A stretch of 63,680 nt of DNA, counting the filler, from Octopus bimaculoides (Eukaryota), in assembly GCF_001194135.2 (NCBI RefSeq). It is 9 parts of 9 records of this genome, joined end to end, with 100 filler letters (N's around TTAATTAATTAA, not from the genome) between each part and the next. Parts side by side here need not be neighbours in the genome. Positions count along the whole stretch, not along the records: positions 53,422 to 57,667 come from NC_068989.1; 8 more parts are not named here. One strand, 5' to 3'. The notes beneath the pieces were generated by a model. The model was not told the origin of the DNA, made no database searches, and worked only from the letters and a program-made list of their open reading frames with translations. The stretch's first letter is position 1; the number at the start of each line of letters is the position of its first letter. The position numbers and the translations under genes are program-made. Shown in pieces: positions 52,161 to 57,913 of the stretch.

Positions 52161-53425
52161 CTTTTGGAGATATACACAAATCCTCGTCAATTTCCAAGAA
52201 AGATTATCACTAAGTGAATGAATTCCGCGATGCCAATCTTTTCCGCAGGTACAGGTGACCACAGATTTATATGCCATCAATTTCAGCCAATATTTACTCA
52301 GTTTGAACATTACGTTTCGGGCAGTGCTACATAACGTTGTATAACTTATTCCCCAAACACTTCCGATTAATTCAATGTTTGAATTGCTAATTTTTTTCTC
52401 CTGTATGATAATGATAATGAAGACAAAATTCCTTTGTTGCCTTTTAGACTTCAAACTTTGGAGTAGTATTTCAAAGAAATTTCTAACTGTGTTGTCTATT
52501 ACTTATGTACGATTTCAGCAATGTTTTAAGCTCAAAAGATATGAAATCCCGTTCACAATTACTGAACGTTTGAAAGCTCACCGATGATGGCATTTCTTTA
52601 TTCATGTCAAAACAAAATACAGATAGCAGTTATGGAAAAGTCATATACGAACGATTATTATGAATGGAGAACATAATCTTAACATATTGTCATGTTACAC
52701 CAAATGAATCCATACACAGCAATGAAATATGAATGGTGTCAAGACCTTTTCAATATCTACAATCGTGGGCTGAAGTATCTGCTTTTACTATTTTATCTTC
52801 ATGGTGTAAAAGCCCTTCCTTGCTATCATTCTGTTTTAGTTGTTTCTGCTCTACAGCTTTTCCTGACAGCTACGCTATTTCAAAATAACTATATTCTATC
52901 CCTGCTAATACCCTATCAAATGACAAGCGTATGCTTGACATTTAAGTATATATTGAAACAAGATGCTGGAGTATATTAATCTTATTTTACAAAGAATAAT
53001 ACAAAACATATAATATTAAGGATGTTATTACTCTCAAGACGAGAATGGTTCTATATCTAATGTCCGAACTTTAAAATTTTAACCGACTGGGTACGGGCAA
53101 AGCTGATGATTTGAATATCTGCGTTGTTTTCGAGATTCTTTCATACATTATTAATATACAAAACCTTCGCAAGTTATACATGTGTGCGCATAGATGTGTA
53201 TAAGTGAGCGCGTATTTACGTATTTATGTCGGAATAAACACACACACACACACACACGCATGCACATATGTATATAGGTATATATACAAATATATAGGTC
53301 TCTCTCTCTCTCTCTCTCTCTNNNNNNNNNNNNNNNNNNNNNNNNNNNNNNNNNNNNNNNNNNNNTTAATTAATTAANNNNNNNNNNNNNNNNNNNNNNN
53401 NNNNNNNNNNNNNNNNNNNNNTCTT

Positions 53426-53463
<38 letters not shown>

Positions 53464-53464
53464 A

Positions 53465-53741
53465 AAGTATCTGTCATTACAGTATCGAAATGTGATTGTT
53501 TCAGTTAGTGGAATAGTTTCATTTTTAAAGTGAAAGTATTTGACATGAGTGTTTTTGTTTCACTTTTGACACGTAATACTTAAATAGTGGAGGAGATATT
53601 ATGTTGCCGTGGGCTCGAACTCTGCAAGAAGTTAAAAAAATTTTTTGACTAAAACACAACTGGAACCCTAAGTAAGGCATGTGTAAAATTTGAATGAAAT
53701 TGGTTGCGTAGTTCTCGAGTTTTAGGGATTCACACACACAC

Positions 53742-53776
<35 letters not shown>

Positions 53777-53826
53777 AACAGACAGACAGCCAGACACACA
53801 CACATTCTCATTTTTATATATATAGA
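53465..53826 (-). mobile_element. Non-autonomous Helitron-like element, 5' portion
   Basis: Minus strand A|TCTATATATATAAAAATGAGAATG-(CTGT)n-...CCAATTTCATTCAAATTT, the typical 5' layout of microsatellite-carrying non-autonomous Helitrons; 3' CTAG end not seen. Confidence 0.55.
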
Positions 53827-54863
53827 TGAAACATAAACATTAATCTTTTGCCAGTTTATCTCAATAAACATCTAACATATCCTCTAACTCTTTAAATCCT
53901 TTGGTATTTCCTGCAAGGTTTACCTTCATTCTGGGTCAGGTATGTGGTCTCATTTGTGTTAATTTTACTTAAATTTTGAAGTGATTAACATCTGAACTTT
54001 TTGTAAAAGCAGAGAATAAAATTTTGAAATCTAATATTTTTTTTCCTTCTTCAGCTTTTATCTTCTTCTTGAGCATCAGTAGTTATTTTTCTCTGAAACT
54101 TGTAACCAAAATAAGGGTTAGGAATTAATAGTTCCTTGGTATTAGAGTTAACATCAAGAGGATCTGCTCTGTTTCTGTACAGCACAACACTAAGATATTG
54201 GTTTCAAATTTAGGCACAAGACCAGCAACTTTGAGGGAACGGGTAATCTGGCAGTAGTATAATACTACCATTGGATAGCAATGGGTCAAATATAAAGGTG
54301 AAGCAGCTTTATACTGTACTCTACTACATTCTTAATGGAATATAACCTAATTATATAAATGTATAGTTTTAGGGAAAAGAACCAATGTGCATGAACTCAT
54401 CGATGAAAATCCACTGTCACATATAGAAAAATTAATAAGTAAAATAATATAATACAAAGTAAGTATCATAAGATAATGATAATAAACTTACTACTAATTA
54501 ATTTAGTGTTAAAGATCAATTGAATTAAACAAAGGTAAAATGATACTTATTGCTACACTGTTTAAACTTAATTTTAATTTTTAATAAACTGAATTTAATT
54601 GAGTTTTTACCAGTAAATTTGGATTTTTATCCCTAATAATATTATTATATATATATATATATATATGTATATNNNNNNNNNNNNNNNNNNNNNNNNNNNN
54701 NNNNNNNNNNNNNNNNNNNNNNNNNNNNNNNNNNNNNNNNNNNNNNNNNNNNNNNNNNNNNNNNNNNNNNNNNNNNNNNNNNNNNNNNNNNNNNNNNNNN
54801 NNNNNNNNNNNNNNNNNNNNNNNNNNNNNNNNNNNNNNNNNNNNNNNNNNNNNNTATATTATA

Positions 54864-54910
<47 letters not shown>

Positions 54911-55053
54911 ACGTGTGTGTGTTTGTGAGCTGTCTAAGAGTCCATAAGTCAGGAAAAAACACGCTTGTATATCTGCCTGTAAAATGGGTGTATCAATTGA
55001 TGTGTACAGTATTATATATTCATTACAACTGATCTTACCAATTGGGGTTCAAA

Positions 55054-55232
55054 GGAGTGTTAGGTAACAGTCCGGTTATGTAACCATTCACTCATCAGAG
55101 GTAACTGTTATGGAATGAAATATGGCAACTGCTCTCCAGAGAGCAGTCACCATATTTTGCCATAATTTCATTCCATAATGGCTACCTCTGATGAGCTCTA
55201 GGTTACATAATCAGACTGTTACCTAACACTCC
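55054..55232. repeat. ~180-bp fold-back element (MITE-like)
   Basis: GGAGTGTTAGGTAACAGTC...CTCATCAGAGGTA...TTATGGAATGAAA..ATGGCAA is present on both arms; central hairpin ACTGCTCTC-CA-GAGAGCAGT. Confidence 0.85.
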
Positions 55233-55341
55233 ATTACTCCCCTAGTGTGAAACCAATTGGTAAGATCAGCTTTAATTGATATATAATACTGTACGCTTTG
55301 ATTAATGTGTGAGTGTGTGTGTGTGTGTGCGTGCGCACATG

Positions 55342-55772
55342 TGTAGTGAACCCTGGCGGTCACATTAGGAAGCAAAATGGAAAAGGGATTTAACGAGAGT
55401 AACCTCTCTCGAGCTTCTAGAAAGTTCTCGAACATTCTAGAAGCTTCTGGTTTATGTGGAAGTCGGGGATTTCCAGTTCATTCCTTATATAAGGAAGGAA
55501 TTTCTAAATTCGTGCCATTCAGTACCTGTTTATTCTTCAACATGCATTGGGTTACACTACCGCATTTACACACCAGCTCGCGTGCATGTTCACCTCACTT
55601 ACTTGGAGACATGTGAACGCAAACAGAATATATTAATGTAATGTTACAAACTTTCCTTCAATTTACCTTATATGTTAATGCATTACCTCCAGTAATAAAT
55701 ATGTTATGACTTATTACAATCGTCTCCTGAATTTCTATTTTCTTGTTCTTATGTACAAGATGGTGACCCCAC
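55342..55772 (+). mobile_element. LTR retrotransposon 5' LTR (55342-55757) + tRNA-Trp PBS, truncated immediately after
   Basis: TGTA...TACA termini, TATATAA at 55486, AATAAA at 55694, then AGA-TGGTGACCCC (complement of the tRNA-Trp 3' end GGGGUCACCA). Confidence 0.8.
55414..55448. promoter_or_regulatory. Perfect 7-unit heat shock element (nGAAn array)
   Basis: cTTCtaGAAagTTCtcGAAcaTTCtaGAAgcTTCt, alternating in exact 5-bp phase, about 40 bp upstream of the TATA box. Confidence 0.8.
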
Positions 55773-55923
55773 TTTTTCTCATACTGACTAGATTATAGTG
55801 TGTCATTTGATCAACATTACCACCATAAAATGGTAACCCTGACATCACTATCTATATATAAATATATACACACACATATATACACACAAAATGTTTATAT
55901 GTTTGTGTGTGTGTGTGTGAGTA

Positions 55924-56062
55924 TACTCTTTTATTTTTTCATTTGTTTCAGTCATTTGACTGCGGCCATGCTAGAGCACCACCTTTTTAGTCGAGCAAAT
56001 TGACCCCAGGACTTATTTTTGGAAACCTACTACTTATTCTATCGATCTCTTTTGCCGAACCG
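55924..56062 (-). mobile_element. SINE family B, 3' half
   Basis: TTTGTTTCAGTCATTTGACTGCGGCCATGCTAGAGCACC...TTATTCTATCGATCTCTTTTGCCGAACCGC. Confidence 0.85.
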
Positions 56063-56660
56063 CAGAAGAGAAAAGAGAGGAAGAAAAGACAGACGGAGGA
56101 AAGGAGGAAAAAGAGGAGGAATGGAAAGTTACAGAGAGCAGAAGGAGAAAGAGAAAAACTAGAAAAATCACTGAGTATGATGTGGTATTCCAGTCCAACT
56201 CCATCACACCCAAGACCACTCAGACCCACCCTCCCCATACAAACACCAAACTCACCCACCTCATTTCCCCACAAGAAAAAAAAAGAAAAAGAAAGAACAG
56301 ACACCACAAAATTTAGAACCCCGCCTCGGTGTGAAAAAGTTTACCAATGCATAGCAGAGAGAATGATGTCACTAAGTGATGGAGAAAGGGGAAAAAGGAT
56401 TGGACTGAAGGAGTAAAAGGACTTAGGACCCAGAGGCGGCAAGTGGTGTTACTCAGTGTGAGGTGAGTAGCACACTCTTCATAATATCATTTTCAGATAT
56501 CATTCGTGTTTTCATATTTTAATTTGTTTTTCATGTTCATTTTCATGTGTCATTCATTATATCACATTTTATTTTTATATTTTTAATTGTTTTTTGTCCC
56601 CACATGTGTTGGTAGTGTCCCCCTCTGTGTAATGCCTTTATGGCAATTTTAAAGAAATAA
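56063..56660 (+). mobile_element. Unclassified element, possibly a Tx1/L1-type ORF1 end plus 3' UTR
   Basis: Frame reads EEEWKVTESRRRKRK...; T-rich UTR ending CCCCCTCTGTGT...TAAAGAAATAA; family assignment is tentative. Confidence 0.35.
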
Positions 56661-57043
56661 AGAAGCTTGCTTCCCAACTACATGATTCTGGGTTCATTCC
56701 CACTGCATGGCACCTTGGGCAAGTGTCCTCTGCTATAGCTTCAGGCCGACCAAGGCCTTGTGAGTGGATTTGGTAGGCAGAAACTGAAAGAAGCCCATTG
56801 TGTGTGTGTTTGTTTGTGTGTGTGTGTATGTGTAGGTCTTTGTGTCTGTGTTTGTCCCTACCACCCATCACTGCTTGACAACCGGTATTGGTGTGTTTAT
56901 GTCCCTGTAACTTAGCATTTCGGTAATAAGTACTAGGCTTCAAAAATAAGCCCTGGGGTCAATTTGTTTGACTAAAACTCTTCAAGGTTGTGCTCCAGCA
57001 TGGCCACAGTCAAATGACTGAAACAAGTTAAAGAATAAAAGAA
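56660..57043 (+). mobile_element. SINE family B (first ~20 bp missing) with internal (GT)n
   Basis: AAGAAGCTTGCTTCCC...GGCACCTTGGGCAAGTGTCC...CTCCAGCATGGCCACAGTCAAATGACTGAAACAAG. Confidence 0.88.
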
Positions 57044-57913
57044 TATATTTTTTAATGATTTTTTTAAAGAACTGATTGGGATGGGTGTGTTTTGGCTTGC
57101 AGTTAATATAAGTTGTTACTGGACTATTTTTCAAAATTGTATAGAAAAGTAGATAAATTTCGAGATTGAATCCACAAATTTATGGTAATGAACTTGCATT
57201 AAGCAGTTGCTAAAATCACAGCAAGCAGTTGACAGAGAACATGAGGTCATAGACAAAAGATGATAAAGACAAGCTAACTCAAAGCTAAAGGTCATGGACA
57301 ACACCAGTAAAATAATCTTAATATATATAAATCTGAAATTGTGTGTTTGTGTGAAGCCTTTTTGAATGTTTATAGAAATCCACATTTTCCACTTTTTCGT
57401 AAAAATTTTTACATCAATGGAATTTTCTCGATGTGAACTTTCCAGTGCAGTAATTAGATTTTTAAAATTCCGTTTACTTTGTGTGATTTAAGGGAGATTT
57501 GGCTGTTGTTTCTAGCAACTTTTATATTTCATCCCTGCTACCTGGAACGTCATTCTTACACACGCGCTCAACATAAAAATATAGAGAGTAAAAGTAAAAG
57601 AGGGAGAGGGAGAGAGAGAGAGAAAGTGATACATACAACGTCATAGATTAAACTTTCATCTCAGTATNNNNNNNNNNNNNNNNNNNNNNNNNNNNNNNNN
57701 NNNNNNNNNNNTTAATTAATTAANNNNNNNNNNNNNNNNNNNNNNNNNNNNNNNNNNNNNNNNNNNNCTACGTCTATCTTTACTTATCTCTGATTTATTT
57801 ATTACTGATCCAAGGTAACACGGTACGCTCAATTGTAAACCACGTTACACTTACTACGGATTGATCTGTTATATCACGGGTCGGTGAACAATCGAAGATT
57901 CTGCGAAGGTTTA

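What the first reader, a model, noticed from the sequence alone, without database searches (positions are those of the whole stretch)
55342..55772. LTR with a perfect 7-unit heat-shock element: candidate heat-inducible retrotransposon promoter
Seen: a 416-bp TGTA...TACA segment contains TTC-ta-GAA-ag-TTC-tc-GAA-ca-TTC-ta-GAA-gc-TTC (55415-55447), a palindromic TATA box TTCCTTATATAAGGAA (55481-55496), an Inr-like TCAGT (55519), AATAAA (55694) and a TGGTGACCCC PBS 3 bp after the LTR. Established: HSF trimers bind alternating nGAAn arrays, three units suffice, and HSE-bearing LTRs confer heat activation (for example ONSEN in Arabidopsis); TGGTGACCCC is complementary to the tRNA-Trp 3' end. Inference: this family could spread HSF-responsive promoters through an ectotherm genome. 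This copy has lost its internal region, so it could drive heat-induced transcription of the flanking host DNA.
Basis: partly seen in the sequence, partly recalled or inferred. Interest (0 to 1): 0.8.

Follow-up and report, generated by a model that had tools for sequence, protein, structure and literature searches.

The report
Retrotransposon LTR fragment with heat-shock promoter
A 416-base terminal repeat of a dead retrotransposon copy carries a textbook heat-shock promoter, so its family probably switched on under heat stress; the trick is already proven in a plant and a flatworm, and only this one broken copy could be examined.

Summary
These are a perfect 7-unit nTTCn/nGAAn array (55415-55447), a palindromic TATA box, an Inr-like TCAGT, AATAAA, TGTA...TACA ends, and TGGTGACCCC 3 nt after the end. 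The array is far beyond chance: about 6e-9 expected in the piece, and no shuffle comes within three mismatches.

The anatomy is a coherent U3-R-U5 5' LTR followed by a tRNA-Trp primer-binding site. That site matches 10 of the 12 bases of the PBS that is a hallmark of the CsRn1 clade of Ty3/gypsy elements.

No second LTR, gag/pol remnant or protein domain lies within 1.9 kb on either side. This is therefore an isolated 5' LTR+PBS fragment, followed by two SINE insertions.

Nothing about the family could be tested. None of the collections searched gave a copy of the LTR, and the metagenome collection also lacks the flanking SINE. Copy number, HSE conservation and heat induction remain open.

HSE-bearing, heat-activated LTR retrotransposons are already validated in Arabidopsis (ONSEN) and in the flatworm Macrostomum lignano, where CsRN1-clade families are among them.

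Verdict: real feature, interpretation partly supported, a new member of a known kind, moderate interest.

The parts
55342..55757 (+). Candidate 5' LTR (416 bp, U3-R-U5), TGTA...TACA ends
   Evidence: TGT...ACA is the usual 3-bp terminal inverted repeat of LTRs (PMC2582038). No second copy in the piece.
55342..55520 (+). Predicted U3 (promoter part of the LTR)
   Evidence: Inferred from the positions of the HSE, the TATA box and the Inr-like sites.
55407..55448 (.). 20-bp unit repeated 2.2 times; it generates the HSE array
   Evidence: TRF. The two units differ at 4 of 8 spacer positions and 0 of 11 core positions, plus one indel at the array's edge.
55415..55447 (.). Perfect 7-unit heat-shock element (alternating nTTCn/nGAAn)
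55465..55474 (+). GGGGATTTCC, a perfect match to the Rel/NF-kB consensus GGGRNWYYCC, between HSE and TATA (weak evidence)
   Evidence: the only match in the window, but 15 of 100 shuffles give at least one.
55481..55496 (+). 16-bp palindrome holding the TATA box (TATATAA at 55486-55492)
55515..55523 (+). Inr-like CCATTCAGT; predicted start at A55517 (31 nt after the first T of TATATAA) or A55521 (35 nt after)
   Evidence: spacing rule from general knowledge. Not tested experimentally.
55521..55717 (+). Predicted R region (start site to poly(A) site)
   Evidence: Inferred. RNA fold is unremarkable (z = -0.24).
55694..55699 (+). AATAAA polyadenylation signal
   Evidence: It is followed by a CA at 55717-55718 and a T-rich stretch.
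55718..55757 (+). Predicted U5, with a T/GT-rich downstream element and the 3' end ...TACA
   Evidence: inference.
55761..55770 (+). Primer-binding site complementary to the 3' end of tRNA-Trp (10 nt)
   Evidence: Matches 10 of 12 bases of the CsRn1-clade PBS TGGTGA(G/C)CCCG(T/A).
55771..55845 (+). 75 nt after the PBS: leader remnant or host flank, undecided; it ends at the microsatellite tail of a SINE

Best explanation
Positions 55342-55770 are the 5' long terminal repeat and primer-binding site of an LTR retrotransposon. It is probably of the Ty3/gypsy type, and the tRNA-Trp PBS points to the CsRn1 clade. The U3 region of the LTR is built like a heat-shock gene promoter.

Proposed mechanism, which is inferred and not shown: under heat or proteotoxic stress, HSF trimers bind the seven contiguous nGAAn units, enough for two trimers. 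The array sits about 75-105 bp upstream of the start site and drives RNA polymerase II from the TATA/Inr core at about 55517-55521. In an intact family member this transcript is the genomic RNA (R-U5-PBS-gag-pol...), so stress would trigger expression and possibly transposition.

This copy is an isolated 5' LTR+PBS fragment with no coding region left. At most it could make a short transcript of about 200 nt ending at its own AATAAA, or a read-through transcript into the SINE-rich flank.

Shown: the motifs, their geometry, their improbability by chance, and the absence of coding sequence nearby. Inferred: LTR identity, HSF binding, heat induction and family membership.
For: 1. The perfect 7-unit HSE is at the stated place and far beyond chance.
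2. The promoter geometry is canonical. The HSE ends 38 bp before TATATAA, Inr-like A residues lie 31 and 35 nt after the TATA, and AATAAA lies about 175 nt after the start and is followed by a T-rich stretch.
3. LTR hallmarks are present: TGT...ACA ends and a 10-nt match to the tRNA-Trp 3' end 3 nt after the end. It is almost identical to the 12-nt PBS shared by CsRn1-clade elements.
4. The two 20-bp units of the array differ at 4 of 8 spacer positions but at none of 11 core positions (p = 0.018, or 0.058 if the edge indel is counted). This hints that the nGAAn cores were kept by selection after the duplication, which can only have acted in a replicating lineage.
5. There is precedent. Canonical HSEs in LTR promoters give more than 250-fold heat induction in M. 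lignano Mag, CsRN1 and Gmr1/Osvaldo families, and mutating them abolishes it. ONSEN does the same in Arabidopsis (PMC12801592).
6. No host gene lies downstream that this promoter could belong to.
Against: - Only one copy was seen. No second LTR lies in the piece, and no copy was found in any collection reachable with these tools. That absence says nothing, because the metagenome collection also lacks the high-copy SINE next to the LTR.
- The PBS match is only 10 nt.
- A 4-of-5 direct repeat (ACATG/AGATG) flanks 55342-55757 and would instead suggest a solo LTR.
- No gag/pol was found, so the element cannot be classified.
- Arrays of (TTCTAGAANN)n also occur as plain tandem repeats in prokaryotic MAG contigs that share nothing else with this LTR. 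The pattern alone therefore does not prove HSF function.
- No expression or binding data exist.
Confidence: 0.6

Rival explanations
1. The LTR identity is right, but the 7-unit array is a private, functionless by-product of a local 20-bp tandem duplication in this dead copy. Alternatively it sits in silent chromatin. In either case the family was never heat-driven.
For: TRF reads the array as a 20-bp unit repeated 2.2 times. Similar 10-bp-period TTCTAGAA arrays arise in prokaryotic MAG contigs with no other similarity to the LTR. No other copy was available to show the HSE in a consensus.
Against: Even a single 20-bp unit (TTCtcGAAcaTTCtaGAA) is already a complete 4-unit HSE, so an HSE predates the duplication. 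After the duplication the units diverged at spacer positions only (4 of 8 against 0 of 11, p about 0.02). The array sits at the right distance from a strong TATA/Inr core.
Confidence: 0.2
2. It is not a transposon. It is a host heat-shock-type promoter for a short unannotated transcript (for example a stress-induced non-coding RNA) or for a first exon. On this reading the TG...CA ends and the tRNA-Trp match are coincidences.
For: HSE-TATA-Inr-AATAAA is also the layout of a small heat-shock gene. Only one copy was seen. The ATG inside AAGATGG at 55759-55761 has a good Kozak context.
Against: No ORF or protein domain lies downstream; the ATG frame stops after 12 codons. A 10-nt exact match to the tRNA-Trp 3' end placed 3 nt after a ...ACA end is improbable by chance and matches the PBS of a known clade. 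The region is otherwise a patchwork of repeats.
Confidence: 0.12
3. It is a solo LTR left by LTR-LTR recombination, flanked by a 5-bp target-site duplication (ACATG/AGATG). The apparent PBS is chance sequence in the host flank.
For: A 4-of-5 match of the bases directly flanking 55342 and 55757. Solo LTRs are generally far commoner than 5' LTR fragments (general knowledge). There is no internal sequence.
Against: A 4-of-5 match has about a 1.6% chance for each boundary and length tried, and several were tried. The PBS 10-mer is orders of magnitude less likely by chance and fits a clade-specific PBS. CsRn1-like elements make 4-bp, not 5-bp, duplications.
Confidence: 0.08

Closest known systems
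HSE-containing Ty3/Mdg4 LTR retrotransposons of the flatworm Macrostomum lignano (Mlig-id115 Mag; Mlig-id36 and Mlig-id55 CsRN1; Mlig-id38 Gmr1/Osvaldo), PMC12801592
   Same: Canonical nGAAnnTTCnnGAAn motifs lie in the LTR upstream of a TATA box and start site, and the host is an animal. One to four HSEs per LTR; by that paper's own regular expression, this array holds five overlapping ones. CsRN1-clade families are among them, and the PBS here is of the CsRn1 type.
   Different: There, families of 4-20 copies with consensus HSEs, more than 250-fold heat induction, and loss of induction on HSE mutation were all shown. Here there is a single truncated copy, no RT to place it, no expression data, and one contiguous 7-unit array.
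ONSEN / ATCOPIA78 (Ty1/copia, Arabidopsis and other Brassicaceae)
   Same: The LTR promoter carries HSF-binding HSEs that make the element heat-activated. The mechanism is the same (as summarised in PMC12801592; PMC3907296 and PMC5059998 listed).
   Different: It is a plant Ty1/copia element with a different primer tRNA and direct HSFA2 binding demonstrated. Nothing of this kind was tested here.
CsRn1 clade of Ty3/gypsy elements (CsRn1, PwRn1, AgCR-1 to AgCR-14), PMC2582038
   Same: tRNA-Trp PBS 5'-TGGTGA(G/C)CCCG(T/A)-3' (10 of 12 identical here) and TGT...A(C/A/T)A LTR ends.
   Different: The clade is defined by its Gag CHCC motif, RT phylogeny and 4-bp target-site duplication. None of these can be seen here, because the internal region and the 3' LTR are absent. 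Their LTRs are 146-381 bp (381 bp in PwRn1); this one is 416 bp.
Helitron1_CE of Caenorhabditis elegans
   Same: A mobile element that carries HSEs and is transcribed in an HSF-dependent way, and can spread heat-responsive sites (as cited in PMC12801592).
   Different: It is a rolling-circle DNA transposon with no LTR and no PBS.
Promoters of cellular heat-shock genes (for example Drosophila hsp70 and hsp83)
   Same: Contiguous inverted nGAAn units within about 100 bp upstream of a TATA box and an Inr (general knowledge).
   Different: No heat-shock protein gene, or any gene, lies downstream. The unit is bounded by LTR ends and followed by a PBS.

Membership tests
LTR of an LTR retrotransposon / endogenous retrovirus | 5'-TG...CA-3' ends with a short terminal inverted repeat (TGT...ACA) | tested here: met
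   TGTA at 55342 and TACA ending at 55757. The rule is quoted in PMC2582038. Weak taken alone.
LTR of an LTR retrotransposon / endogenous retrovirus | Primer-binding site complementary to a tRNA 3' end, a few nt after the 5' LTR | tested here: met
   TGGTGACCCC at 55761-55770, 3 nt after the LTR, equals 10 nt of the tRNA-Trp 3' end with CCA.
LTR of an LTR retrotransposon / endogenous retrovirus | A second, directly repeated LTR bounding an internal region | tested here: not met
   No repeat of the segment anywhere in 53422-57667. The piece reaches only 1.9 kb to each side, and there is a 182-N gap upstream.
LTR of an LTR retrotransposon / endogenous retrovirus | Internal gag/pol coding sequence | tested here: not met
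   No Pfam hit in the ten longest open frames of the piece (66-141 aa), nor in the three stop-masked forward frames of 55758-57667.
LTR of an LTR retrotransposon / endogenous retrovirus | Target-site duplication | tested here: inconclusive
   Only a 4-of-5 match (ACATG/AGATG) directly around 55342-55757. None is expected if this is a truncated 5' LTR+PBS.
LTR of an LTR retrotransposon / endogenous retrovirus | Multiple dispersed copies in the host genome | not testable with these tools
   The source genome is not in any searchable collection. LTR patterns gave 0 hits. The flanking SINE also gave 0 hits in metagenome contigs. Translated-ORF routes were empty.
Heat-shock element (HSF binding site) | At least three contiguous, alternately oriented nGAAn units | tested here: met
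   Seven perfect units at 55415-55447.
Heat-shock element (HSF binding site) | Position upstream of a core promoter | tested here: met
   38 bp upstream of TATATAA; Inr-like sites lie 31-35 nt after the TATA.
Heat-shock element (HSF binding site) | HSF binding and heat-induced transcription | not testable with these tools
   Needs ChIP or EMSA, RNA-seq or CAGE, or a reporter assay.
Heat-activated LTR retrotransposon family (ONSEN-like, Mlig-id115-like) | HSE present in the family consensus LTR, not just in one copy | not testable with these tools
   No other copy could be retrieved. There is only the indirect hint from the contrast between spacer and core divergence.
CsRn1 clade of Ty3/gypsy | tRNA-Trp PBS TGGTGA(G/C)CCCG(T/A) | tested here: met
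   10 of 12 bases identical; the last two differ.
CsRn1 clade of Ty3/gypsy | Gag with CHCC motif, RT phylogeny, 4-bp target-site duplication | not testable with these tools
   The internal region and 3' LTR are absent from the piece.

The most novel reading that the evidence does not exclude
The fragment is a relic of a family of HSF-driven CsRn1-like Ty3/gypsy retrotransposons in a mollusc. The flanking SINE looks cephalopod to me, but that rests on memory and could not be tested.

It would be a third validated host lineage for heat-hijacking LTR elements. Because CsRN1-clade families also carry HSEs in a flatworm, it would raise the possibility that heat responsiveness is an old, inherited trait of that clade across spiralian animals, and not only repeated convergence. 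Solo and truncated copies would then seed heat-responsive promoters through the genome.
Probability: 0.2. Interest if true: 0.6.

Novelty: new member of a known kind. Interest (0 to 1): 0.4.

Why it matters
If the family is real and heat-driven, it would add a third host lineage in which LTR retrotransposons captured the heat-shock response. The authors of the flatworm study predicted that more such cases would be found. It would also give a concrete candidate for temperature-triggered transposon activity, and for dispersed heat-responsive promoters, in a marine ectotherm. That bears on how warming affects genome stability and gene regulation.

As it stands it is a single dead copy. The value is a well-defined, cheaply testable lead and not a discovery.

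Tried and rejected
1. **Other copies by DNA pattern.** The HSE pattern, the TATA region, the 5' end and the U5-PBS junction gave 0 hits in viral contigs. An HSE+TATA pattern gave 0 hits in metagenome contigs.
2. **Control for that absence.** The conserved core of the flanking SINE also gave 0 hits in metagenome contigs. That collection simply does not hold this organism, so the absence of LTR copies means nothing.
3. **Genome contigs (prokaryotes).** Five MAG loci hold (TTCTAGAANN)n arrays but have no other similarity to the LTR. They were rejected as relatives.
4. **Copies through spurious ORFs.** I looked for a translated open frame across the LTR and for three other ORFs of the piece. None is on record. 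The homology search for the LTR frame and for a SINE frame found nothing.
5. **Identifying the organism.** SINE sequence words were absent from the literature library and from the supplement of the Octopus vulgaris repeat paper. The host remains unidentified.
6. **RNA and bacterial-signal scans.** Rfam gave only sub-threshold hairpin matches to microsatellites and to the foldback. No tRNA was found. The bacterial promoter/terminator scan is irrelevant. The R-U5 RNA has no unusual structure.
7. **Readings considered and rejected.** A host hsp gene promoter (no gene downstream) and a Helitron or other DNA transposon (no such ends).

Full report
**1. Observation**

The piece (53422-57667) is AT-rich (35% G+C) and full of microsatellites and repeats.
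- TGTA at 55342
- the array TTCtaGAAagTTCtcGAAcaTTCtaGAAgcTTC at 55415-55447
- the 16-bp palindrome TTCCTTATATAAGGAA at 55481-55496
- TCAGT at 55519-55523
- AATAAA at 55694-55699
- TACA ending at 55757
- TGGTGACCCC at 55761-55770, after the spacer AGA

The array is not a chance event. With up to three mismatches allowed, no hit occurs in 100 dinucleotide-preserving shuffles. From base composition, about 6e-9 perfect 7-unit arrays are expected in the piece. The five overlapping canonical 3-unit HSEs are the only ones in the piece, against 0.03-0.07 expected.

Tandem Repeats Finder shows how the array arose: a 20-bp unit, itself a 4-unit HSE, repeated 2.2 times over 55407-55448. The upstream copy has lost one base, which puts two further would-be units out of phase.

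**2. Anatomy**

Read on the + strand, the segment is a coherent U3-R-U5.
- The HSE array ends 38 bp before TATATAA (55486-55492).
- Two Inr-like A residues lie 31 nt (55517) and 35 nt (55521) after the first T of the TATA.
- AATAAA lies about 175 nt further on. It is followed by a CA and a T-rich stretch, and the segment ends 58 nt after the signal with ...TACA.
- Three bases later comes TGGTGACCCC.

The reverse complement of human tRNA-Trp with its CCA is printed in PMC6379413 as TGGTGACCCCGACGTGAT.... It occurs once in the window, and matches with up to one mismatch are expected 0.09 times.

The match ends after 10 nt, but that need not mean truncation. The CsRn1 clade of Ty3/gypsy elements shares a 12-nt tRNA-Trp PBS, 5'-TGGTGA(G/C)CCCG(T/A)-3'. 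Its other hallmarks are TGT...A(C/A/T)A LTR ends, 4-bp target duplications and LTRs of 146-381 bp (PMC2582038). The window matches 10 of those 12 bases. This is a lead to the clade, not a classification.

**3. What is missing**

- No second copy of the segment lies anywhere in the piece.
- No tRNA gene was found, and no Rfam family reached its threshold.
- The ten longest stop-to-stop open frames of the piece (66-141 aa, of the 28 that reach 45 aa) have no Pfam domain. The three forward frames of 55758-57667 with stops masked have none either.

Downstream of the PBS there are 75 nt of unassigned sequence. Next comes the microsatellite tail and 3' part of a 5'-truncated SINE on the minus strand (about 55846-56062). 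A full SINE of the same family follows on the plus strand (56654-57065), flanked by the duplication TTTTAAAGAA.

So this copy is an isolated 5' LTR+PBS fragment, or a very decayed element.

A 4-of-5 direct repeat (ACATG/AGATG) directly flanks 55342-55757 and would fit a solo LTR. I judge it a coincidence, because it has about a 1.6% chance per configuration tried, while the PBS match is orders of magnitude rarer and clade-typical. I keep it as a rival.

**4. Mechanism**

- Established knowledge: HSF trimers bind contiguous inverted nGAAn units, and three units suffice.
- Literature: canonical HSEs in LTR promoters give more than 250-fold heat induction in four M. lignano families of the Mag, CsRN1 and Gmr1/Osvaldo clades. 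Mutating the HSEs of an isolated LTR abolishes induction. ONSEN in Arabidopsis and Helitron1_CE in C. elegans work the same way (PMC12801592).
- Inference: in the live ancestors of this copy, stress-activated HSF bound the array and drove genomic RNA from about 55517-55521.

One internal observation supports function in the replicating lineage. The two 20-bp units differ at 4 of 8 spacer positions and at none of 11 core positions. The hypergeometric p is 0.018, or 0.058 if the edge indel is counted as a core change. The sample is small, so this is only a hint.

What the dead copy does now is open. It may make a short RNA of about 200 nt ending at its own poly(A) signal, or it may read through into the flank.

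**5. Family-level claims**

- DNA pattern scans found nothing in viral contigs or in metagenome contigs.
- As a control, the conserved core of the neighbouring high-copy SINE is also absent from metagenome contigs. That collection does not hold this organism, so the negative result carries no weight.
- The prokaryotic genome collection returned five MAG contigs with (TTCTAGAANN)n arrays that share nothing else with the LTR. They are a useful reminder that such arrays can arise as plain 10-bp tandem repeats.
- Searching for gene calls made on spurious ORFs across the LTR, the SINE and other parts of the piece also failed.
- The host could not be identified with the tools. The SINE looks cephalopod to me, but that rests on memory.

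**6. Comparison and novelty**

The closest known things are the flatworm HSE-LTR families and ONSEN. It works like them on paper, but membership in a heat-activated family is untested.

The library holds no paper that joins "heat shock element", "retrotransposon" and words beginning "mollus". A mollusc case would therefore be new as an instance. [quoted passage not shown]

Verdict:
- It is a new member of a known kind.
- Interest is 0.4.
- Confidence in the LTR-with-heat-shock-promoter reading is 0.6.

Noticed in passing
window 55002-55296 (arms paired by the repeat finder: 54992-55045 with 55253-55306, and 55039-55121 with 55165-55247): A foldback (MITE-like) element of about 300 bp lies just upstream of the LTR, with only a (TG)n tract between them. 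It folds as a near-perfect hairpin, -100 kcal/mol, z = -16.6. The sub-threshold Rfam plant-miRNA matches at 55090-55197 are this hairpin.
   Followed up: partly
window 56654-57065 (+) and about 55846-56062 (-): Two copies of one tRNA-headed SINE family with an internal (TG)n tract. The plus-strand copy is full length and flanked by the duplication TTTTAAAGAA. The minus-strand copy is 5'-truncated and has a microsatellite tail. From memory it resembles the abundant octopus SINE, which would make the host a cephalopod; I could not test this.
   Followed up: partly
window 55465-55474: GGGGATTTCC, a perfect Rel/NF-kB consensus (GGGRNWYYCC), sits between the HSE and the TATA box, and a weaker AGGAATTTCT lies just after the TATA. 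It is the only match in the window, but 15 of 100 shuffles give one. It may be a second stress or immune input to the LTR, or chance.
   Followed up: partly
L001-L005 (prokaryotic MAG contigs, e.g. L002 931-968, L004 about 490-557): Tandem arrays of 10-bp TTCTAGAAnn units, four to eight units long, occur in contigs binned as WOR-3, Prevotellaceae (two contigs of one MAG), Thermodesulfobacteriota and Gaiellaceae. They look like iterons or repeated operator sites for an unknown protein. They are unrelated to the LTR outside the array.
   Followed up: no
window 54673-54854: An assembly gap of 182 N sits inside a long (TA)n tract. The top-ranked inverted repeats reported by the repeat finder (I1-I5) are artefacts of the N run and the (TA)n.
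   Followed up: no
window 56460-56468: GAG|GTGAGT is a perfect 5' splice-site consensus. It follows a purine-rich, low-complexity stretch (56063-56420) that holds the longest open frame of the piece (141 aa, no Pfam domain). It could be a chance match or the end of an untranslated exon.
   Followed up: no
window 53422-53462 and 57583-57623: The piece begins with (TC)n and ends with (GA)n, so its two ends are complementary low-complexity tracts. This is probably a coincidence of microsatellites.
   Followed up: no
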